Assembly: GCF_023055435.1 (NCBI RefSeq)
Contig: NW_025963791.1
Span: 29,016,001 to 29,080,000, forward strand
Direction of reading: 5' to 3'
DNA from: Haliotis rufescens
Taxonomy: Eukaryota
Length of the DNA stretch: 64,000 bases
Shown: positions 2,441 to 34,044 of the stretch, piece by piece
How positions within the stretch are numbered: position 1 is the first letter of the stretch
Layout: each line of letters opens with the position of its first letter
The notes under the pieces: model-generated
Databases searched by the model: none
What the model saw: only the letters and a program-made list of their open reading frames with translations
What the model was told of the DNA's origin: nothing
Made by a program: the position numbers and the translations under genes

Positions 2441-4615
2441 TGACAGCCATGTTACAGATCTGTTGACACAGTTGGTGTCCTGGCTCCGATCAATGCAACC
2501 AGTTCATGACAGCCATGTTACAGATCTGATGTCACAGTTGGTGTCCGGAATCAGATCAATGCAACCAGTTCTCCTGGCTCTGATCAATGCAACCAGGTCA
2601 TGACAACCATGTTACAGATCTGATGACACAGTTGGTGTCCCGGCTCCGATCAATGCAACCAGTTCGTGACAGCCATGTTACAGATCTGATGACACAGTTG
2701 ATGTCCTGGCTCCGATCAATGCAACCAGTTTATGACAGCCTTGTAACAGATCTGTTGACACAGTTGGTGTCCTGGCTCTGATCAATGCAACCAGTTCATG
2801 ACAGCCTTGTTACAGATCTGTGGACACAATTGGTGTCCTGGCTCTGATCAATGCAACCAGTTCATGACAGCCATGTTACAGATCTTTTGACACAGTTGGT
2901 GTCCTGGCTCTGATCAATGCAACCAGTTCATGACAGCAATGTTACAGATCTGTTGACACAGTTTGTGTCCGGAATCAGATCAATGCAGCCAGTTCATGAC
3001 AGCCTTGTTACAGATCTGTTGACACAGTTGGTGTCCTGGCTCTGATCAATGCAACCACTTCATGACAGCCTTGTTACAGATCTGTTGACACAGTTGGTGT
3101 CCTGGCTCTGATCAATGCAACCAGTTCATGACAGCCTTGTTACAGATCTGTTGACACAGTTGGTGTCCAGAATCAGATCAATGCAACCAGTTCTCCTGGC
3201 TCTGATCAGTGCAACCAGTTCATGACAGCCATGTTACAGATCTGATGACACAGTTGGTGTCCTGGCTCCGATCAATGCAACCAGTTCGTGACAGCCATGT
3301 TACAGATCTGATGACACAGTTGATGTCCTGGCTCCGATCAATGCAACCAGTTTATGACAGCCTTGTTACAGATCTGTTGACACAGTTGGTGTCCTGGCTC
3401 TGATCAATGCAACCAGTTCATGACAGCAATGTTACAGATCTGTTGACACAGTTGGTGTCCTGGCTCTGATCAATGCAACCAGTTCATGACAGCCATGTTA
3501 CAGATCTGTTGACACAGTTCGTGTCCTGGCTCTGATCAATGCAACCAGTTCATGACAGCCTTGTTACAGATCTGTTGACACAGTTAGTGTCCTAGCTCTG
3601 ATCAATGCAACCAGTTCATGACAGCCTTGTTACAGATCTGTTGACACAGTTGGTGTCCGGAATCAGATCAATGCAACCAGTTCTCCTGGCTCTGATCAAT
3701 GCAACCAGTTCATGACAGCCATGTTACAGATCTGATGACACAGTTGGTGTCCTGGCTCCGATCAATGCAGCCAGTTCATGACAGCCATGTTACAGATCTG
3801 ATGACACAGTTGATGTCCTGGCTCCGATCTATGCAACCAGTTTATGACAGCCTTGTTACAGATCTGTTGACACAGTTGGAGTCCTGGCTCTGATCAATGC
3901 AACCAGTTCATGACAGCCTTGTTACAGATCTGTTGACACAGTTGGTGTCCAGAATCAGATCAATGCAACCAGTTCATGACAGCCTTGTTACAGATCTGTT
4001 GACACAGTTAGTGTCCTAGCTCTGATCAATGCAACCAGTTCATGACAACCTTGTTACAGATCTGTTGACACAGTTGGTGTCCGGAATCAGATCAATGCAG
4101 CCAGTTCATGACAGCCTTGTTACAGATCTGTTGACACAGTTGGTGTCCTGGCTCTGATCAATGCAACCAGTTCATGACAGCCTTGTTACAGATCTGTTGA
4201 CACAGTTGGTGTCCTGGCTCTGATCAATGCAACCAGTTCATGACAGCCTTGTTACAGATCTGTTGACACAGTTGGTGTCCGGAATCAGATCAATGCAGCC
4301 AGTTCATGACAGCCTTGTTACAGATCTGTTGACACAGTTGGTGTCCTGGCTCTGATCAATGCAACCAGTTCATGACAGCCTTGTTACAGATCTGTTGACA
4401 CAGTTAGTGTCCTGGCTCTGATCAATGCAACCACTTCATGACAGCCTTGTTACAGATCTGTTGACACAGTTGGTGTCCTGGCTCTGATCAATGCAACCAG
4501 TTCATGACAGCCTTGTTACAGATCTGTTGACACAGTTGGTGTCCGGAATGAGATCAATGCAACCAGTCCATGACTGCAAGGTTACAGATCTGTTGACACA
4601 GTTGGTGTACGGAAT
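2441..4615. repeat. Minisatellite, 66-bp unit, ~32 copies, with three 28-bp partial units
   Basis: Unit TGACAGCCTTGTTACAGATCTGTTGACACAGTTGGTGTCCTGGCTCTGATCAATGCAACCAGTTCA. Confidence 0.97.
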
Positions 4616-5531
4616 TAAAAAAACATTATCGAAGGTTCCGTAAAATGATTGTCCCCATGTGTGACACTAATTCCTTTCATAATCAATGTAACTACCATCA
4701 CCCAGTGTCTTAAGCCAACGCGTTGCTCAGCATGTATTAAATATTGGATTGTATTGTGAATAACCACCAGTAGCTAAGTGATGACGTTAATCCTGCTGGG
4801 GTATTCTGCAGGAAGCTGAGGCACCGTAAGTTCCTATGACCACAAGCGAGGTGGTCCAACTTTGGTTGCTGGTGGCTTATAGTCCGTGTTTTAAACAGTT
4901 GTAAATGATATTGTTATGAGGAAATATGTTTGAAAAATTGTTTTTCAATATAACTTTGTATTTATGGCTCAATTGTTAAAAGATCAACTTGTTCTCGTCG
5001 CTTTCTGGCTGGAATAATGCCGATGCGACGTTAAAGTTTAACTCACTCACTCACATACCAACCCTTTTAAGAGCTGTTACCGTCAGAGTGTTTACCCCGG
5101 ACCAACTCCACCACCCAGCGCCACCTGCCACATATACAACACACGAGATATAACAGTGCCAAGGAGAAAGATCCCTGCAGAGCACACAAAGTAGACGAGA
5201 TCATGTATGATACATTGTACACTCTCGACGTTCCAGAACACTGTTTGCCGAGTCTAAACAATAGATAAAAATCCGCCAGCTCGTGGCATTTCACACCAAC
5301 GTCCAACATGGGACATACTCCAACTGTCACATTCATGTTCTTTATGACATGAGCTTAATCTATAGTTGATGGATATGGTTCAGGATGCTTTGAAGTTCGG
5401 GGACAGAGCTGTTTGTAACTACGTGTTTACTTGCCCAAACATTAATGTTCTACTATGAGTCTAACAGTTTAATACCTCCTCAACAATGACAGATGACGTT
5501 CAGGTGCTCGCGGCGCAGTCTTGGGGATATA

Positions 5532-5722
5532 CAGTCAGCTACGTTTGTAACGAACACGTTTGTAACGAACACGTTTATAACGAACTGACAGATATGACCA
5601 ACTTATGTTTTTGGTCACGGATATTTTCTGTATATATGCTGTACATATGCTTATAACGAACTACGGTTATAACGAACTAAAATCAGTGTCCCCTTTGAGT
5701 TCGTTATAACCATAGTTTACTG
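5532..5722. mobile_element. Same MITE family (left arm of the inverted repeat)
   Basis: TA-CAGT...ACTG-TA; internal 15-bp duplication. Confidence 0.8.
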
Positions 5723-7770: not shown

Positions 7771-8091
7771 TATATCCTTAAGACTGCTCCGCGAGCATCC
7801 GAACGTCATCTGTCATTGTTGAGGAGTCCCCAAATCGTTGACTTCTGTAAATGGCTTGGCGGAAATGAAACATGCTTCCAGTCAGACGACTCTAGAATAC
7901 GTCATTGGCAGGTTTCTCGGTGGCAGTCTCAAAGTCGGTGATGACGAATGTGGGATCAAGGTGGTAGTCACGCCACTCTCACCTTGTCCATTACAGCCCT
8001 CTATCACATCTTATATAGTCCTTCATCTCTCCATCTTAATCCAACCCATCCCTCATTTTACCACATCACACCCTAACTCGTCCCTCATCTC

Positions 8092-8610
8092 GTCACACAT
8101 CTTAGTATATCACACCTCAACTCGTCACAGATCTCAGTATATCACACCTTAAATCGTCACACATCTCACTATATCACACCTCACCCTGTCACACATCTCA
8201 CTATATCTCACCTCAACTTATCACACATCTCACTACGTCATACTTCAACATGTCACAGATCTCACTATATCACACCTCAACTCGTCATTCATCTCACTAT
8301 ATCACACCTCACCCTGTCACACATCTCACTATATCATACCTCAAGCCGTCACACATCTCAGTATATCACACCTCAGCTCGTCACACATCTCACTATATAA
8401 CACCTCAACATGTCACACATCTCACTATATCACACCTCAATTTATCACACATCTCACTACATCACACCTCACCCTGTCACACATCTCACTATATCACACC
8501 TCAAGTCGTCACACATCTCACAATATCACTGCTCAACTCGTCACACATCTCACTACATCACACCTCACTCTGTCACACATCTCACTATATCACACCTCAA
8601 GTCGCACTTC
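8092..8610. repeat. Minisatellite, 32-bp unit, ~16 copies, decaying toward ~8760
   Basis: Unit GTCACACATCTCACTATATCACACCTCAACTC. Confidence 0.93.
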
Positions 8611-10708
8611 ATCACAGCATGTCAAAACTCACCTCGTGTTATTTCTCAACATATCACTTCTCAACTTCTCACTAATCTTATCGCATCACATCTTAACTCG
8701 TCACTTTTTTCAACACGTCACACTTCAACTCATTCCTTATCTCACCATATCACATCACAACCCGTCCATTACCTATTTATGACAAGTCTCTTGCCTTGTT
8801 CGGTACACAAAGCAACTGCACCTCTTTGTGTCTTATAAATATTTGTACTAACTTATTTTCTCAAGAAGCAGATGTAATATGACCAAGAAAGCTGCACCAG
8901 CACATATGAATCCAAGCTAGTTACATCGTGGAAGATGCATGCATAAGGTATACCTGTAACATAATTAGGTGTGCGGTAAGATACATTCATGAGAGACATG
9001 AGTTGATGTACTCTCTATGTTAGTTTATGCTCCCTGATCTTACGCATGCATGCTATGGTCCTACTCGGTAAGAATACCACAGTTAGGCATTTGTCCACTT
9101 CATTCCAAAGCATATGACAGAAATCAAGCTTAGGGTTATTCCCCAGACCTATTTCATAATACGTAAATATCCGGAGAATGGCGCATTACATAACTAATTT
9201 GAGACACAAAATTGCGGTAAATATGCTGCAAATGTAATGCCAACAGTTCGGCAATTCGAGCGAGGAACATGAGAAATGAACCTTACATGTTAGTGGGGTA
9301 CATTGAAAATAATATTTCTTTTTATGCATAAACTAGAGATACCCGTTCTTTATATTGAACATAACGAGTATTAACTCTATATGTTACATCGACAAGGATA
9401 ACACATTATAAAAAGCGTGTTTTTCTATCTCAGTTAGAAATCCTTAAATTGTTTGTTTTACCAACCAGGCTTGCTCGAAAGCACAAATAATCATGTTCCA
9501 CAATAAAGCAATCGTTAATTCGTGGATAATATACCATTAGTCGCTGAGGCGCCCAAACCAGTTCCACCATGCCACGTTGAATCTGTTCAAGAGGCTGACT
9601 TAGGCTTTAAGGGGTTAACGGACAATACATGGTCAATGCATGGCCATGATCGACAAACAATCCACCCATTTATGATAATTACAGCACCTAATGGAGACCC
9701 AGCGTTTGAGGGGCAATACCTACTTGAATATGACTTTATGAAGAGTTTGTGTACATACAATTGACGTTTGAAATATGACGATATCTAGGGTAAATCGTGT
9801 AAACATATTTTGCATAGCCTAAGCCGTGCCTACAAAAGTAATATCACACAGTATCTCCGGGTCTGATTACTGAAAGGTTTATTAGTTATTTGTGTAATTT
9901 CTCCTGACAAAATGATATATATTTACCTATTCAAATAATAAATGTCGAGGAGATATTTAACATGTAAACATGTTATACGAACCCATTTTGTATTTCAAAA
10001 GGGTAGAGACATTGTCAATGTATAAAACAGTAAACATGTCTACATTAAAATACCTTTATGTACGTGCACAAAGGAGAGCTTAGTTTTTTATATATTATGT
10101 TCATGATATAATATCTAACTTTTTGTACTGAATCTGAAGGCGAAAATACAAAAAATACAATTCGTACGTTGTTATTTTGACAACTATCGTGAAATAACTA
10201 GTTAACTATGAAATTATTTTTTCGCTTCTTATTACATAAATATGTTATACATAAACACATTTTATACAAGTGACAAAACCCTTGATTGTAAACAAGTAAA
10301 GATCCCAACACTAATTTATCCATGTACATAATAAACAACACGATAACAGCAATTGCAAACATAAACTGAGTGATAAAAGAGTTTGAATGAAAGAAATGTT
10401 GATGAATTTACTTATGTCTATTTAACCATCACTCATTCCCACAACGGTTTGTAAAAAGTAATTTGTGGCTGGGTAATTTTGTGTAAAACTAATTTGATTC
10501 AATGAAGGTGAGTGAAAGAAATTCAAATGAGTGGTATAGATTCATTTGTTCCTCTGTTTCTGATAAAATTAACTGAAAGGTATAGTTTCTGTTGCTGCTC
10601 AGTGTATGATAAAATATAGGGGAAGCCATAGTTTCTTTTGCTCCTAAGTTTGTATGTAAATTAATACTATACAATTGTATTCATTTGATCCATTGCACCT
10701 CAGGTTTT

Positions 10709-11850
10709 GATAAAATCAACTGAGAGCTCGGTATAATAGTTTCTGTTACTCCTCAGTTAATGATATGATCAAATGAGAGGCCATAGTTTCTTTACATCCA
10801 CAGTATATGATAAAATCAACTGAGAGCTCGGTATAATAGTTTCTGTTACTCCTCAGTTAATGATATGATCAAATGAGAGGCCATAGTTTCTTTACATCCA
10901 CAGTATATGATAAAATCAACTGAGAGCTCGGTATAATAGTTTCTGTTACTCCTCAGTTAATGATTTGATCAAATGAGAGGCCATAGTTTCTTTACATCCA
11001 CAGTATATGATAAAATCAACTGAGAGCTCCGTATAATAGTTTCTGTTACTCCTCAGTTAATGATTTGATCAAATGAGAGGCCATAGTTTCTTTACATCCA
11101 CAGTATATGATAAAATCAACTGAGAGCTCGGTATAATAGTTTCTGTTACTCCTCAGTTAATGATATGATCAAATGAGAGGCCATAGTTTCTTTACATCCA
11201 CAGTATATGATAAAATCAACTGAGAGCTCGGTATAATAGTTTCTGTTACTCCTCAGTTAATGATATGATCAAATGAGAGGCCATAGTTTCTTTACATCCA
11301 CAGTATATGATAAAATCAACTGAGAGCTCGGTATAATAGTTTCTGTTACTCCTCAGTTAATGATTTGATCAAATGAGAGGCCATAGTTTCTTTACATCCA
11401 CAGTATATGATAAAATCAACTGAGAGCTCGGTATAATAGTTTCTGTTACTCCTCAGTTAATGATATGATCAAATGAGAGGCCATAGTTTCTTTACATCCA
11501 CAGTATATGATAAAATCAACTGAGAGCTCGGTATAATAGTTTCTGTTACTCCTCAGTTAATGATTTGATCAAATGAGAGGCCATAGTTTCTTTACATCCA
11601 CAGTATATGATAAAATCAACTGAGAGCTCGGTATAATAGTTTCTGTTACTCCTCAGTTAATGATTTGATCAAATGAGAGGCCATAGTTTCTTTACATCCA
11701 CAGTATATGATAAAATCAACTGAGAGCTCGGTATAATAGTTTCTGTTACTCCTTAGTTAATGATTTGATCAAATGAGAGGCCATAGTTTCTTTACATCCA
11801 CAGTATATGATAAAATCAACTGAGAGCTCGGTATAATAGTTTCGGTTGCT
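10709..11850. repeat. Near-perfect 100-bp tandem array, 11 full copies plus a partial copy
   Basis: GATAAAATCAACTGAGAGCTC recurs at 10709, 10809 ... 11809. Confidence 0.97.
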
Positions 11851-12569
11851 CTTCGGTTTTATGTAAAGTACATAATTATATTCATCCCATCCATTCTGTT
11901 CACAGACCGTCGATACATACCGCCGGCTAGGTAGACACACATTGATTAATACTATTTGTTCTATTAATAAGGTGGTGACACATATACCTGACCCCTTAAG
12001 CTGATTTCAGGTGTTGATCTTCACATCATTTGAAAAGATTAGTTTGAAAACTAAAGTCGAGATTGATGAATATGCCTTTTGCTGTTGTAAAATTATTGCT
12101 AAGAATATCCAAGTCTCAGTTGCATGCAACAAAAATACAGTTCATGCAGTGAATAATTCATGATTGCTTTTCAAGATGCATCGTGATCGTTAAACCTGTG
12201 TGTTGCCTGACAATGAATACAATAAACAAGACTCAGGATACACATGTCATCACTGCGTGGTACGACTCAATGCTTGTACATGCAGTGTGATATGTGAGTA
12301 ACACCGAGAACCCGGATACTAACATAATTATATATTGTGTCACGGGTGGTGGGGGTTTATTACACTTAGTCATACGTGTACGTGGATTAGATACCGGATG
12401 CCAGTCCTATACGATGTAGCACATAAGTGTTCGCTGTTCTCTTTAACCCTCGGTTTTCTGGCTTGACGTGGGAAACGATTAATATGAAATGGGGGCTGTG
12501 TTGGGACAAGGGTGAAGTAGATGGTTGCTCTTGCTATTAACCACATGTTTGACATATTTGATATTATAA

Positions 12570-12716
12570 NNNNNNNNNNNNNNNNNNNNNNNNNNNNNNN
12601 NNNNNNNNNNNNNNNNNNNNNNNNNNNNNNNNNNNNNNNNNNNNNNNNNNNNNNNNNNNNNNNNNNNNNNNNNNNNNNNNNNNNNNNNNNNNNNNNNNNN
12701 NNNNNNNNNNNNNNNN
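12570..12716. other. Assembly gap (N run)
   Basis: Ns. Confidence 1.
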
Positions 12717-27295: not shown

Positions 27296-27591
27296 TGATG
27301 GTTTTGAATAATGATAGTGATGATGAATATGATGATGATGATGAATATGATGATGATGATGATGATGATGAATGTGATGATGATGATGAATATGAATATG
27401 ATGAATATGAATATGATGATGGCGTTGGTGTTTGAGGCGAAGTGACGGAGGACTGATGAAGGTAGTGCGGAGGCGGTCTGATGGTTTTGGACAATGACGG
27501 CGATGATGATAATGATGATGATGATGATGAATATGATGATGAATATGATGATGATGAATATGATGATGATGATGATGATAATGATGATGGC

Positions 27592-27637
<46 letters not shown>

Positions 27638-27682: not shown

Positions 27683-28163
27683 TCTGACACAGGTTGGGAG
27701 TGGTTGTGTTGTGTTGTGTTGTGTGTGTTATATGACATTCCGTTATATGTGTCGTGTCTTACACTATTACCAACCATTATCTAAATACCCATTGTATTAC
27801 ACAGCAATGTGACACATTCCTTAATGCTACATTATCAATCAGATGCACAAACATGATAAAGTTTACCTTTCTTTCGTCTTCCGAATTTCAATGTAAAATG
27901 GGTAATCCTAGTACGAAAACCAGCAGGGCCATAAGGTGTGAGTGTCTTATTTCTTCAATTACACATGTCATTCTTTGAGTTATGTAAAATCTACATGACT
28001 GGCTCCATTATAAGCTAAACTAGGAGACAAAATGAATAAGAAGAAAAAACCCTTGTCACTGTGATGTTGACACCAGATCCCACGGTTACTTAACATCAAC
28101 AATGGTCAACCATCCGCACAGCCTCTGAACACAGCCAGCCACCAATCACACGCCATGAAGACA

Positions 28164-28568
28164 ATATACTTTAGTGATGAAGGCCGCTGAAGGTATAACT
28201 ATGTCACGTTTTGCTAACAGCAAACGAGTTTAAAGAAGATGCTTTGTGATATCATTCTTACGGTGACAGTATCTTTTGTTGCCAATGGAATATTATATCC
28301 TTCTAACATAATACCTCATATACATCTTCCTTACCCCGTGGGACATAACGATGACACATTAGAGGGCGTTGTTTAGGGGTATATGATTTGTTTCTCAATT
28401 CTCAAGGTACGTTACATCGCTATTGCAATCCTGAGAGTATCAAATTAGAGATGAACATTGTGTTTTCAGACTTACGAGTGTTGTTGAGAATTTGATGCCT
28501 GGAAATTCCATGTAATTATGACGGCGTTAGCTTGGGCTTTCAAAAGTTATTATTGTCATATATCTATA
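28164..28568. repeat. 405-bp direct repeat, left copy
   Basis: No mismatch seen against 29875-30279 (offset 1711). Confidence 0.93.
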
Positions 28569-29874
28569 GTAACCTACAAATTTGGCGATGCAATAATTGA
28601 CACTTCCGACTCCGTCAAATATGGCGGAATAATCATAAACAATAATTTATCCTGTAAAGAAAGAATCATGACATGTTGCTCAAAAGCAAGAAAAAGTGTT
28701 AATTCACTACGATCACTCGGCCTCAACGACTCAGACCTCCACCCAGTTGCATGTGTCAATATATGGAAAAGAATGATTTTATCTACAAGTTTTTATGGAT
28801 GTGAATTGTTACCAGCCTTTTACGGTAAAGAACTTGAAATGATTGAATGTACACAACGTTACTTTGCTCGTCATATACAAGGATTTGGTAAAAGACATCC
28901 AACCGATTCGTCTATTTCTAACTTGGGAATGTGGTCAATGAATGGCTACATTGATAAATGTAGACTACAATTATTAGGAAGGCTCTGCAATAACGATTGT
29001 AACTCAATAACAAAAGACCTATTTTGTGCTCACATTGCTACCAACGCTTTTGTCAATATTAGCCGTCCAGTAAGCATATGTAACATCCTTCTATATACTG
29101 CTAAAAAATACCATTTGGATAACTATATAAAGGGATACACTGATAGCGGTTCGTTCCCAACAAAATCGGCTTGGCGAGCTCTTGTAATCAGACGTCTATC
29201 AGAGAATGAACAGTACATCTGGAGAGAGAGACTAGCACAGAGACCGGATCTTTCACGATGCCATAAAATTCATAAACGGTTACAAATGCATGTTCTTTAT
29301 AATGTAATGTATCTCTATCCACATCTAAGACAACCCCTGCAACTTTGTATTAAAATCGGATCAAGAGCAAAAGTGTCGAAAGAATGTAACCATTGCAATA
29401 GACATTGCTATGACTATGATTGCCATATTATTTTGCACTGTGAAATGTTTATGCCTGACAGAAATAATTTCTTCTCATGCCTAATTGATAAACTTGATGT
29501 AGATGTATACGTGAAAATAGATATGCTTGACGATGATGATATGCTTTCATTCTTTCTCGGTGCAGATGTCCATGACTTGACAAACGAACTTGATTACGAT
29601 ACTTGGCAAAGCATCATACTGTCTTTCTGCCACTTCATATGGAATTTAAAGAATTACCTTATGTATATCTACTAGATACCTTTCTGCTATCAAAATGTAC
29701 ATTGTAAATTGTTTATTCATAGCAGTGTATAACATCATTTCTTTGTATATAGTCAAGTAATTTCATTGATGTATTGTAAATAATGTACTTGCCCATGTAA
29801 AATCTTCGGATTCAACTCTGGAGGAAATAAAGAAATTCATTCATTCATTCATTCATTCATTCATTCATTCATTC
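28569..29874 (+). mobile_element. 5'-truncated non-LTR retrotransposon (LINE; RTE-X-like, clade tentative): post-RT C-terminal ORF, 3' UTR, AATAAA and (TTCA)n tail
   Basis: Uninterrupted ORF to 29675 with KYGGI, YGCEL, QRYFARHIQG and a CxxC...H....C knuckle; AATAAA at ~29826; (ATTC)n 29835-29875. Confidence 0.88.
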
Positions 29875-30279
29875 ATATACTTTAGTGATGAAGGCCGCTG
29901 AAGGTATAACTATGTCACGTTTTGCTAACAGCAAACGAGTTTAAAGAAGATGCTTTGTGATATCATTCTTACGGTGACAGTATCTTTTGTTGCCAATGGA
30001 ATATTATATCCTTCTAACATAATACCTCATATACATCTTCCTTACCCCGTGGGACATAACGATGACACATTAGAGGGCGTTGTTTAGGGGTATATGATTT
30101 GTTTCTCAATTCTCAAGGTACGTTACATCGCTATTGCAATCCTGAGAGTATCAAATTAGAGATGAACATTGTGTTTTCAGACTTACGAGTGTTGTTGAGA
30201 ATTTGATGCCTGGAAATTCCATGTAATTATGACGGCGTTAGCTTGGGCTTTCAAAAGTTATTATTGTCATATATCTATA
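29875..30279. repeat. 405-bp direct repeat, right copy
   Basis: Begins immediately at the end of the LINE (TTCA)n tail. Confidence 0.93.
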
Positions 30280-30830
30280 AACTAATAAACCGTAATGTTA
30301 ATTGACATTGTAACAATATAAAGACATTAAATTCCGTTGCACTCTCTCGTCACGTAAGCGAGAGCATTATTAGACAGACATGACGTCAATCTGGAATGCA
30401 ATAACGTCATCGATGACGTCATATACTTCCGTGACGACTGAACTCGCTTCGTAAGAGGAAGAACATACAACTAACTTGAGGCAGTTATGACAAATATAAT
30501 TCATGTATAGTTTAGGTGGAATCCATTGGCTGAGGCGAATGGCATGCTTATTGAAATTTGGAAGAAACATTGATACTAATAAAAACGTAATCATGCGCAG
30601 TCCAGACGAACTTCGGGATCTCATTCCATTTGACGAACCTTTTCATTCATCCCGAAATGTGTGTAGAGGACTGAAGTCACAGTTCACGAAGCGATAGAGT
30701 AATACATTACCTAGCTTAATGAAACAGATCATCTTTTGAACGATAGTGAGAGAATTCGATATCCTCTGGCGGAAGACGGTACCTGACAATCAAAGGGTTT
30801 CCCGATGGTTCGATATCAAAATATCGTCAC

Positions 30831-32725
30831 ACATTACATACAGACAATTCCCCTTACGGGTACGCATTTTACAGCTGGACAGATCGGGTAGGTGTAGAGT
30901 ACCCTTATACATGATATACAGCCAACTCCCCCTTACGGGGACGCATTTTACAGCTGGACAGATCGGGTAGGTGTCGAGTACCCTTATACATGACATACAG
31001 CCAACTCCCCCTTTCAGGTACGCATTTTACAGCTGGACAGATCGGGTAGGTGTAGAGTACCCTTATACATGACATACAGACAACTCTCCCTTACGGGTAC
31101 GCATTTTACAGCTGCACAGATCGGGTAGGTGTAGAGTACCCTTATACATGACATACAGACACCTCCCCCTTACAGGAACGCATTTTACAGCTGCACAAAT
31201 CGGGTAGATGTCGAGTACCCTTATACATGACATACAGACAACTCCGCCTTACGGGTACGCATCTTACAGCTGGACAGATCGGGTAGGTGTAGAGTACCCT
31301 TATACATGACATACAGACAACTCCCCCTTACGGGTACGCATTTTACAGCTGGACAGATCGGGTAGGTGTAGAGTACCCTTATACATGACATACAGACAAC
31401 TCCCCCTTACAGGAACGCATTTTACAGCTCGACAAATCGGGTAGATGTCGAGTACCCTTATACATGACATACAGACAACTCCGCCTTACGGGTACGCATC
31501 TTACAGCTGGACAGATCGGGTAGGTGTAGAGTACCCTTATACATGACTTACAGACAACTCCCCCTTACGGGTACGCATTTTACAGCTGGACAGATCGGGT
31601 AGGTGTCGAGTACCCTTATACATGACATACAGCCAACTCCCCCTTACGGGTACGCATTTTACAGCTGCACAGATCGGGTTGGTGTCGAGTACCCTTATAC
31701 ATGACATACAGCCAACTCCCCCTTACGGGTACGCATTTTACAGCTGGACAGATCGGGTAGGTGTAGAGTACCCTTATACATGACATACAGCCAACTCTAC
31801 CTTACGGGTACGCATTTTACAGCTGCACAGATCGGGTTGGTGTGAAGTACGCTACACATGACATACAGCCAACTCCCCCTTACAGGAACGCATCTTACAG
31901 CTGGACAGATCGGGTAGGTGTAGAGTACCCTTATACATGACATACAGCCAACTCCCCCTTACAGGAACGCATCTTACAGCTGGACAGATCGGGTGGGAAA
32001 AGAATACCTTTATACATATTACATACAGCCATCTCCTCTTTACGGGTAGGCATCTTACAGCTGGACAGATCGAGTAGGTGTAGAGTACCCTTATACATGA
32101 CATACAGCCAACTCTACCTTACGGGTACGCATTTTACAGCTGGACAGATCGGGTTGGTGTGAAGTACGCTACACATGACATACAGCCAACTCCCCCTTAC
32201 AGGAACGCATCTTACAGCTGGACAGATCGGGTAGGTGTAGAGTACCCTTATACATGACATACAGCCAACTCCCCCTTACAGGAACGCATCTTACAGCTGG
32301 ACAGATCGGGTGGGAAAAGAATACCTTTATACATATTACATACAGCCATCTCCTCTTTACGGGTAGGCATCTTACAGCTGGACAGACCGAGTAGGTGTAG
32401 AGTACCCTTATACATGATATACAGCCAACTCCCCCTTACGGGTACGCATTTTAAGCTGGACAGATTTGTAGGTGTAGGGTACGCTAAATATGACATACAA
32501 TCAACTCATGTTTACGGGTACGCATTTTCAAGCTGTGCAGATCGGGTAGGTGTCAAGTATGCTAAACATGACATACCGTCATCATTCTTTACGGGTAGGC
32601 ATTTTACAGCTGCACTGATCGGATAGATGTACATCACGCTACACATGACATACAATCAAGTTCTCCTTTCGGGAACGCATTTTCCATCTGTGCAGATCTA
32701 GTAGGTGTAAAGTAACATTATACAT
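30831..32725. repeat. Minisatellite, 79-bp unit, ~24 copies
   Basis: Unit CATGACATACAGCCAACTCCCCCTTACGGGTACGCATTTTACAGCTGGACAGATCGGGTAGGTGTAGAGTACCCTTATA. Confidence 0.96.
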
Positions 32726-34044
32726 GTATCATTTGAGAATATAACGAAGTTGGATATAACGAACAATAAATGACATTATTTATACGAATGATGGACGTCA
32801 TTAAGACGAATTGATTTCAATTTCGTTACGCCAGGAGCTGACAGATTAATACGTTTTAGGCTAGTTTATGACCGTTTATGATCGGAAGAAAATTATTGGA
32901 TGGTTATCATTTTTTTGCATGATTATTGTGAGTTCCCTTTAAGGTATTTCAGCGAGTCGGGGCTTTAACTTTAACTTTTAACTTTAGTATGAGTTCATTT
33001 TATGGCGCTTCTGCTTTCAACAAGATATAGGTCACACATGTCATTGAACTTAAATCAGTGCATCAATGCGCATGTTGTATTTTACTAGAAATACATATAA
33101 TAATTCAGCTGTGTGACATTACCGTTATACACACATAATATGATCCGAAAAACGACGTTGTAATGTCCTTCACGTCAACGGCTAAAGGCGCGGAGGAATT
33201 ATTTACGAGTGCTTCTAGAATACAACTTTGGGGGGAAACAGCGATGAAGGCATGGGTAAATGTAAGGAATGTGTTTGCCGCTTCATTTAACTTTTACAGC
33301 AAATGCTCAGTACGACTCACACTTACAGCACATTTATCATGCAAACCGACATCTTCAACAAGAGAAAAATAGGTAACGTAACAACGGCTATGACAACTCG
33401 GCATTTGATTGGCTGGTATGCGAAGTTTGACCTTTCTTGTACTACTTTTCATAACTTTACAAACGTATATACGTAATCAGGAATTGCTGTGGGATTATTG
33501 TGCAAAACAAAACTGTATACATGTGGCATTTACATTGGAACATACATGTATCAGCGGTTACATGTACGTTCAATATAAACTGGCAATTTCCAGGTCTAGA
33601 TAGATGTTAAAATACAGGTTTCATTTAGAATCGCCTGTTGGCTGAACAACTGTAAGCCAAATGGCCGAGCAAAGTGATTTCAATGGTGCATTTAAAAATT
33701 CTTGGACACAAAATCAGTATAGACGAACACTGGCTTACAGTGTTTTAGATCGAATAAATTAGCAAATATGAGGAAATTAAACTCCGAAGATTTTCCCCTT
33801 GAAAAAAGAACATATTTGTATACGTAAGCTATAATTAAGGTAACTCACAGATGCTAATGAGGTTGTCATGTCAACTGAATAATATGGTCTATCGTGTATG
33901 AAATACAGCCAAAATTTATATTTGAATCTCACACAGGCTACACGCTGCAAATGTGGGCGTGTCAAATGACTCAGCTGGCTGATATGCAGTGTTGAGATTC
34001 GTCATCAATTTGAATTTGCTTTTTATCCAAACATGTTTGTAAAC

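What the first reader, a model, noticed from the sequence alone, without database searches (positions are those of the whole stretch)
28164..30279. Young LINE flanked by an apparently perfect 405-bp target-site duplication
Seen: 28164-28568 is repeated with no visible mismatch at 29875-30279. The copies abut exactly the 5' truncation point and the (TTCA)n tail of a 1306-bp LINE with an unbroken ORF. Known: LINE TSDs are usually under ~20 bp, as for the SINEs in this window. Inference: a very widely staggered second-strand nick or break-repair-coupled integration, showing retrotransposition can duplicate host DNA. An assembly join of filled and empty haplotypes is the alternative.
Basis: partly seen in the sequence, partly recalled or inferred. 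Interest (0 to 1): 0.75.

Follow-up and report, generated by a model that had tools for sequence, protein, structure and literature searches.

The report
LINE insertion with 405-bp target duplication
A very young, truncated jumping gene (LINE) in this mollusc genome is flanked by a perfect 405-base copy of the host DNA it landed in, a rare but already known outcome of LINE integration that also recurs in older copies of the same family.

Summary
28164-28568 and 29875-30279 are identical (405/405). They abut the 5' truncation point and the (TTCA)n tail of a 1306-bp LINE fragment.

- **Not part of the element.** The 405 bp occurs only at these two places in the genome. Other LINE copies continue into LINE sequence at the 5' side and into unrelated flanks after the tail.
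- **Empty site exists.** Contigs of three runs from three studies, one labelled as another organism, carry flank, one 405-bp copy, flank. A fourth run shows a graph branch exactly at the first base of the repeat. No contig shown carries the repeat-to-LINE junction, and no long read was available.
- **Long duplications recur.** Of 29 other insertions with both junctions resolved, two older ones have TSDs of about 168 bp (97% identical) and about 190 bp (96%). Three have 17-45 bp and 24 have none.

Best reading: a real, recent, polymorphic target-primed insertion whose second-strand break lay 405 bp away. L1 TSDs over 100 bp are published for cultured cells, so this is a natural example of a known kind. 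An earlier unchecked note of this scan (s1-807674) reports a kilobase-scale case elsewhere in this genome.

The parts
28164..28568 (+). Upstream copy of the 405-bp target-site duplication (host DNA)
   Evidence: Identical to 29875-30279. Present only at these two places in the genome. Present once in the empty allele.
28569..29874 (+). 5'-truncated copy (1306 bp) of a 5609-bp LINE with an apurinic/apyrimidinic-type (APE) endonuclease, corresponding to about positions 4310-5609 of the full-length copy
   Evidence: It is 99.85% identical to the full-length copy L039:947-6555:-. The 5' junction has 1 nt of exact microhomology.
28569..29675 (+). Open C-terminal 368 codons of ORF2 plus the stop codon (the part after the reverse transcriptase)
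   Evidence: No Pfam hit for this piece alone. The full ORF2 has the APE endonuclease and RT domains.
29676..29834 (+). 3' UTR of the LINE
   Evidence: Conserved in all copies up to the tail.
29835..29874 (+). (TTCA)n tail, about 10 units
   Evidence: Other copies have tails of about 3 to more than 12 units, each followed by unrelated flank.
29875..30279 (+). Downstream copy of the 405-bp target-site duplication
   Evidence: It starts directly after the tail. In the empty allele it is the only copy.

Best explanation
This is a real, recent and still polymorphic insertion of an active LINE with an APE-type endonuclease, made by target-primed reverse transcription (TPRT). The proposed steps are as follows.

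1. The bottom strand was nicked between window positions 28163 and 28164 of the empty site. Its 3' end primed cDNA synthesis on the (UUCA)n-tailed LINE RNA.
2. Reverse transcription stopped or was cut off about 1.3 kb in, which gives the 5' truncation.
3. The top strand was broken not a few bases away but 405 bp downstream, after the base that is now 30279.
4. That top-strand end was joined to the cDNA end with 1 nt of microhomology.
5. Fill-in of the two 405-nt single-stranded stretches left the host segment on both sides of the insert.

Shown: the anatomy, the single-copy empty site, the uniqueness of the 405 bp, the youth of the element, and the recurrence of long TSDs in the family. Inferred: the order of the nicks, and what made the distant top-strand break. 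In this family 24 of 29 resolved insertions have no TSD and the rest range from 17 to 190 bp. I therefore infer that the second-strand break is not placed by the element at a fixed offset. It is more likely supplied by the host (a stray nick, a repair intermediate or a replication end), as has been proposed for large L1 TSDs.
For: 1. The repeat is perfect and abuts both element ends.
2. The repeat occurs twice only in the genome, both times here.
3. The element is 5'-truncated and ends at the tail.
4. Contigs of X5, X6 and X16 (three studies; X16 carries another organism label and differs at about 2.5% of sites) run from flank through one copy of the repeat to the other flank (table 8: record pieces 27734-28173 joined directly to 29885-30750).
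5. In X1 one contig ends at 28193 and the next begins at the first base of the repeat. They overlap by 30 nt, as expected where a second sequence enters the graph at that base.
6. The element family is active-looking. Two full-length copies are 100% identical over 5609 bp, with intact ORF1 (560 aa) and ORF2 (1230 aa, APE endonuclease plus RT).
7. Two older insertions of the same family have the same anatomy. L052 has a TSD of 168-174 bp with 5 mismatches. L054 has about 190 bp with 8 mismatches. In L054 the TSD holds 86 bp of unique DNA plus the first 104 bp of an interspersed repeat that runs on intact only behind the downstream copy.
8. Microhomology at 5' junctions (1, about 6 and 8 nt) fits end-joining of truncated cDNA.
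9. L1 TSDs over 100 bp are documented (PMC5223499, PMC2912911, bioRxiv 10.1101/2024.12.14.628481; passages read).
Against: No read or contig shown contains both repeat copies, the repeat-to-LINE junction or the tail-to-repeat junction. Only short Logan contigs were available, the tail region was skipped by the tool, and 46 loose ends and 737 contig pieces were not listed. The four positions where this copy differs from the bulk of the family were not seen in any of the four runs (table 3). That is expected if contigs drop rare variants, but it gives no support. In X1 the contig is broken at the start of the repeat but not at its end, where a second branch would be expected. The enzyme or process that made the distant break is not identified. 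With three long TSDs, no rule for their length can be drawn.
Confidence: 0.8

Rival explanations
1. Assembly artefact. The individual carries an ordinary insertion or none, and the assembler produced a false 1711-bp near-tandem duplication.
For: The two copies are 100% identical. Three of four runs show only the empty form. No contig with the repeat-to-LINE junction was shown. The copy-specific LINE variants were not seen in any run (table 3).
Against: The assembled sequence contains two junctions, repeat end to LINE and tail to repeat start. Neither exists in an empty allele, nor would both exist in an insertion with a short TSD at one end of the 405 bp. A simple join of filled and empty haplotypes therefore cannot make this structure without reads that carry both junctions (inference from the sequence). 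There is no N gap within 15 kb. X1 shows a branch at exactly the first base of the repeat. The same anatomy, with diverged repeat copies, exists at two other loci.
Confidence: 0.1
2. Endonuclease-independent or repair-coupled origin. A break or stalled fork at this site was repaired with a 405-bp tandem duplication, and LINE cDNA was captured as filler at the duplication junction.
For: [quoted passage not shown] The 5' junction has only 1 nt of microhomology.
Against: The insert has a complete 3' end and a full-length tail joined directly to host DNA, as in all other copies. That is the mark of priming at the tail. Two of the three long-TSD sites have a CATT match between target and tail. This rival differs from the best explanation only in what made the second break.
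Confidence: 0.08
3. The LINE landed exactly at the joint of a pre-existing tandem duplication of the 405 bp, or the 405 bp was duplicated after the insertion.
For: None specific. The genome is rich in tandem repeats.
Against: The only pre-insertion allele seen, in 3 of 4 runs including one labelled as another organism, has one copy. Both element ends would have to coincide to the base with the duplication boundaries. Two other loci show the same coincidence.
Confidence: 0.02

Closest known systems
Large TSDs (over 100 bp) of human L1 insertions recovered in cultured cells (Gilbert 2002/2005 and Symer 2002, as cited in PMC5223499), and their excess in excision-repair-deficient cells (PMC5223499)
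   Same: A direct repeat of host DNA hundreds of bp long abuts the tail and the 5' end of a 5'-truncated insert. It is a minority outcome: no more than 10% of events in HeLa according to PMC5223499, and here 2 of 29 other resolved copies, or 3 of 30 with this one. PMC2912911 states the association of extremely long TSDs with 5' truncation, and all three long cases here are truncated (1306, 533 and 598 bp).
   Different: This is a natural germline insertion in a mollusc, not a cell-culture event, and it is still polymorphic with the empty site on record. The element is not L1: it has a (TTCA)n tail instead of poly(A), and its ORF2 RT is only distantly similar to L1 ORF2p (E 1e-24). The family's usual outcome is no TSD at all rather than about 15 bp.
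Target-site alteration classes defined for L1 and zebrafish L2 in DT40/HeLa cells (long TSD over 20 bp, short TSD, blunt, truncations; PMC4245944)
   Same: There is a spectrum from no duplication to long duplication within one element, and 5' joining uses microhomology.
   Different: In that work TSD length peaks at an element-specific value (15 bp for L1, 5 bp for ZfL2-1, from the abstract). No peak is visible here: 24 insertions have none, and the others have 17, 32, 37, about 168, about 190 and 405 bp.
L1-associated tandem duplications of 1-10 kb in experimental clones and cancers, regarded as large TSDs (bioRxiv 10.1101/2024.12.14.628481)
   Same: A host segment is duplicated in tandem with the retroelement at the joint.
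   Different: Those are larger, somatic events ascribed to break-induced replication. Here the size is 0.4 kb and the insertion is in the germ line.

Membership tests
LINE (non-LTR retrotransposon) with an APE-type endonuclease | ORF2 with an apurinic/apyrimidinic-type (APE) endonuclease domain followed by a reverse transcriptase domain | tested here: met
   on the full-length copy: PF03372 at residues 90-315 (E 1.2e-8) and PF00078 at 634-885 (E 1.2e-29); the RT matches L1 ORF2p and R2 structures (E 1e-24 to 1e-11). The window copy itself holds only the last 368 codons, after the RT.
LINE (non-LTR retrotransposon) with an APE-type endonuclease | Copies share a 3' end and are truncated at variable 5' positions | tested here: met
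   5' ends fall at many different positions of the 5609-bp copy, and all copies end at the (TTCA)n tail.
LINE (non-LTR retrotransposon) with an APE-type endonuclease | No terminal repeats belonging to the element; a simple-repeat or A-rich 3' tail | tested here: met
   (TTCA)n tail. The flanks differ between copies.
TPRT insertion with a large TSD | The direct repeat abuts both ends of the insert and is not part of the element | tested here: met
TPRT insertion with a large TSD | The pre-insertion (empty) site carries the repeat once | tested here: met
   contigs of X5, X6 and X16 run from flank through one copy to the other flank.
TPRT insertion with a large TSD | Both repeat copies and the insert lie on one DNA molecule in the individual | tested here: inconclusive
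   only contigs were available. X1 has a branch at the first base of the repeat, but no junction contig was shown. Read laying is capped at one call.
CR1/L2/Jockey-group LINE clade | Placement of the RT in a phylogeny with reference elements of the named clades | not tested
   No reference clade sequences are on hand. only shows closest relatives in bivalves (57% identity or less), and remoter hits that carry the automatic names 'jockey-like' and 'X-element'. I do not file the element under a clade.

The most novel reading that the evidence does not exclude
In this LINE family the element does not place the second-strand break at all. The top-strand end would come from host chromatin or replication, and the long TSDs (about 168, about 190 and 405 bp) would fall at roughly one and two nucleosome-repeat or Okazaki-fragment lengths. 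The inserts would then record where the nearest host-made 3' end lay. A corollary is that such [repeat]-LINE-[repeat] structures, together with the family's apparent liking for minisatellite arrays, could seed new long-period tandem repeats by unequal exchange.
Probability: 0.1. Interest if true: 0.7.

Novelty: new member of a known kind. Interest (0 to 1): 0.4.

Why it matters
Large TSDs have mostly been described for human L1 in cultured or repair-deficient cells. PMC2912911 (passage read) notes that they were thought to be a HeLa peculiarity and that longer TSDs in vivo needed study.

This locus is a clean natural case in a distant animal and a different LINE lineage. The insert has zero mismatches between its repeat copies, the empty allele is on record, and two older fixed-looking cases exist in the same family. 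Together these show that LINE integration duplicates hundreds of bases of host DNA in germ lines at a measurable rate, about 1 in 10 to 15 resolved copies here.

It also offers a polymorphic locus where the structure can be checked by PCR. The young active family (two 5609-bp copies are identical) could be used to study how the second-strand break is chosen.

Tried and rejected
- **The 405 bp as part of the element or of another repeat.** Rejected. It has only two genomic copies, and other element copies have different flanks.
- **Pfam on the window's ORF piece.** No hit. The domains lie upstream in the full-length copies.
- **Clade assignment.** Not achieved. Pfam, NCBIfam, PDB and one protein search gave only generic LINE RT and endonuclease matches and automatic names.
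- **L021.** A 635-bp direct repeat lies on both sides but at offsets of 114 and 774 bp, so it does not abut the element. I read it as a long-period local repeat, not a TSD.
- **L024.** A 37-bp match links the upstream flank end with a site 820 bp behind the tail, with diverged arrays on both sides. Left unexplained.
- **L018.** An 87% match of 204 bp abuts both ends, but it lies in a 45-bp-unit array. Counted as unresolvable.
- **Short TSDs in the 24 copies without one.** The longest end-anchored exact matches are 0-5 nt, no better than mismatched pairs of flanks (observed mean 3.6, null mean 3.3).
- **A second round of copies to enlarge the sample.** 8 loci, of which 5 had no TSD, 1 lay in an array and 2 were unresolved. 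No further long TSD.
- **Literature.** Three full-text searches. I read passages only, not whole papers, of PMC5223499, PMC4245944, PMC2912911, bioRxiv 10.1101/2024.12.14.628481, PMC9996862 and PMC12633430. The last two concern Alu TSDs of ordinary length and added nothing. Those three searches listed no paper on large TSDs of LINEs in molluscs, but none of them used a mollusc term, so this is no claim that none exists. The supplementary tables of PMC5223499 (Tables S1 and S2, TSD sizes) were not seen and bear on the figure of 10% or less.

Full report
**Observation.** Window 28164-28568 and 29875-30279 are identical over 405 bp. The identity stops at once on both sides. The 1306 bp between them (28569-29874) has an open frame of 368 codons ending at 29673-29675, a 3' UTR and a (TTCA)10.5 tail. 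There is no N within 15 kb; the window's two N stretches are at 12570-12716 and 63530-63706.

**What the insert is.** The 1306 bp has at least 364 candidate relatives in the window's own 1.33-Gb assembly, many of them 99-100% identical.
- Two copies on different contigs (L039, L040) are 100% identical over 5609 bp, so that is the full length.
- The full-length copy has an ORF1 of 560 aa with no Pfam domain and only weak coiled-coil-type hits.
- Its ORF2 of 1230 aa has an APE-type (apurinic/apyrimidinic) endonuclease (PF03372) and a reverse transcriptase (PF00078). The RT is distantly similar to L1 ORF2p and R2 structures.
- The closest proteins in the large database are from bivalves at 57% identity or less. 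Remoter ones carry the automatic names "jockey-like" and "X-element". I could not assign a clade.
- Earlier notes of this scan call the genome red abalone (s1-818167). I did not verify that.
- The window copy corresponds to about positions 4310-5609. Other copies continue upstream into element sequence, and all end in (TTCA)n followed by unrelated DNA.

**Is the 405 bp host DNA?** Yes. It occurs only at these two places in the genome; a 60-90-bp piece has weak matches elsewhere.

**Reads.** Only Logan contigs were on offer. I laid four of the 24 listed runs, from four studies.
- In X5, X6 and X16 one contig runs from the left flank through a single copy of the repeat into the right flank. The record pieces 27734-28173 and 29885-30750 are adjacent in the record. 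This is the empty site with one copy.
- X16 carries a different organism label and differs at about 2.5% of sites, so the single-copy state is the older one.
- In X1 the left-flank contig ends at 28193, and the next contig begins at the first base of the repeat and runs on through it into the right flank. The two overlap by 30 nt. That is what a de Bruijn graph with 31-letter words gives where a second path enters at that base. The word size is recalled, not given by the tool.
- This fits a tail-to-repeat junction in X1, but the tool skipped the tail region and showed no junction contig.
- All loose ends shown at 28568 are the element's own upstream sequence, from longer copies.
- The four sites where this copy differs from the bulk of the family were not seen in any run.
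- The filled allele is therefore supported only indirectly outside the assembly.

**Do other copies do the same?** I examined 51 other insertions, all of those for which I fetched sequence (52 loci: L010-L038, L049, L050-L063, L066-L073; L036 and L037 are one duplicated event).

| Class | Insertions | Loci |
|---|---|---|
| In minisatellite arrays on both sides, TSD cannot be read | 12 | L010, L012, L013, L018, L020, L022, L027, L049, L051, L059, L061, L067 |
| Unresolved or complex | 10 | L019, L024, L028, L032-L035, L060, L070, L073 |
| Both junctions resolved | 29 | see below |

Of the 29 resolved insertions:
- **24 have no TSD.** The longest end-anchored matches are 5 nt or less, no better than mismatched flank pairs.
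- **3 have TSDs of 17-18, 32 and 37-45 bp** (L030, L036/37, L031).
- **2 have long TSDs.** L052, a 533-bp fragment, has a TSD of 168-174 bp with 5 mismatches. L054, a 598-bp fragment, has about 190 bp with 8 mismatches.

In both long cases the repeat abuts the tail and the truncation point.
- The L052 repeat belongs to an old interspersed family. Its two local copies are 97% alike, against 80% or less to any other copy.
- The L054 repeat holds 86 bp of unique DNA plus the first 104 bp of a young interspersed element. That element runs on intact only behind the downstream copy, which is the picture expected if the LINE landed inside it and duplicated 190 bp.
- The divergence between repeat copies (3-4%) is about 1.5 times that of the LINE fragments from the young master (2-3%), as expected if both date from the insertion.
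- These two cases cannot be assembly joins, so they raise the prior that the perfect 405-bp case is real.

**Mechanism.** The anatomy is that of target-primed reverse transcription. The tail is joined at the first nick (between 28163 and 28164 of the empty site). The truncated 5' end is joined to the far end of the duplicated segment with 1 nt of microhomology; the equivalent figures are about 6 nt in L052 and 8 nt in L031. Two of the three long-TSD targets have CATT just before the nick, matching the tail phase. The second-strand break lay 405 bp downstream. This family mostly leaves no TSD, and otherwise leaves anything from 17 to 405 bp. I therefore infer that the element does not fix the position of the second break and that the host supplies it. 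This step is inferred, not shown.

**Comparison with what is known.**
- PMC5223499 (passages read) states that typical L1 TSDs are 5-30 bp, that events over 100 bp were seen in HeLa at no more than 10% of recovered inserts, and that they form the majority in excision-repair-deficient cells. It proposes a distant, unrelated second nick.
- PMC2912911 (passages) notes that extremely long TSDs go with 5'-truncated inserts, were thought to be a HeLa peculiarity, and needed study in vivo.
- PMC4245944 (abstract and passages) defines long TSDs (over 20 bp) as a class for L1 and zebrafish L2.
- bioRxiv 10.1101/2024.12.14.628481 (passages) regards 1-10-kb tandem duplications at L1 inserts as large TSDs.

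The present case is thus a natural, germline, polymorphic example of a known kind of event, in a mollusc LINE of another lineage. An unchecked first-reader note of this scan (s1-807674) reports a LINE with an apparent kilobase-scale TSD elsewhere in this genome. I could not locate or test it.

**Rivals.**
- An assembly artefact is unlikely. The assembled sequence holds two junctions that neither an empty allele nor an insertion with an ordinary short TSD at either end of the 405 bp would contain together. X1 branches at the right base, and the same anatomy exists in diverged form elsewhere. It is not excluded without a spanning read (confidence 0.1).
- Repair-coupled capture of cDNA at a break differs from the main reading only in the source of the second break (0.08).
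- A pre-existing tandem duplication hit exactly at its joint is very unlikely (0.02).

**Verdict.** It is a new member of a known kind, of moderate interest.

Noticed in passing
Loci L010, L012, L013, L018, L020, L022, L027, L051, L059, L061 (both flanks); L015, L017, L024, L034, L050, L058 (one flank): Copies of this LINE family sit in minisatellite arrays (units of 20-69 bp) more often than expected. Of 38 copies, 10 have an array on both sides and 6 more on one side only. Array cover in 82 kb of comparison DNA is 9.6% (binomial p = 0.003 and 0.001). The comparison DNA is mostly this one window, so the baseline is rough. Arrays on one side only, starting right at the tail or at the 5' end, are hard to explain by random insertion. 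They may mean large target deletions or later recombination.
   Followed up: partly
L049 (G000:C47:102600-107900): A 658-bp 3' fragment of the LINE plus about 420 bp of a short-unit array is repeated head to tail as a 1077-bp unit, with two full units at 97% identity and a third with a shorter fragment. The LINE piece has become part of a higher-order tandem repeat.
   Followed up: partly
L036/L037 (G000:C594, about 32.02 and 32.05 Mb): Two near-identical copies lie 32 kb apart, so the segment was duplicated after the insertion. The insert is flanked by a 32-bp TSD, but its 5' 1266 bp is not LINE sequence apart from a 30-bp inverted match. This could be a chimeric insert or a later insertion.
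   Followed up: partly
L054 and L064, L065: The LINE in L054 landed in a young, very abundant interspersed element: at least 411 candidates, many 97-98% identical over the 104 bp tested, and at least 274-305 bp long. I did not classify it.
   Followed up: no
G000:C35, 38.18-40.06 Mb (four copies; L068 is one): Four LINE fragments on one contig all start at the same element position (query 432). They lie hundreds of kb apart, which suggests they are parts of a larger repeated segment rather than four insertions.
   Followed up: no
window 2441-4608, 8083-8604, 10708-11858, 27318-27637, 30831-32726, 58473-59763: Six tandem arrays (units of 66, 32, 100, 3, 79 and 90/270 bp) cover about 11% of the window. 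The 79-bp array begins 550 bp behind the downstream repeat copy, and the TGA-rich array ends 530 bp before the upstream one.
   Followed up: no
window 28518-29675: An ATG inside the upstream 405-bp copy is in frame with the LINE ORF, giving a 385-codon chimeric open frame. I take this as chance. No evidence of expression was sought.
   Followed up: no
L024 with L047 (G000:C594, about 54.05 Mb): The 37 bp just before the LINE's 5' end recur 820 bp behind its tail. An array starts directly at the tail, and a related array (about 70% alike) lies upstream. No simple insertion model fits.
   Followed up: partly
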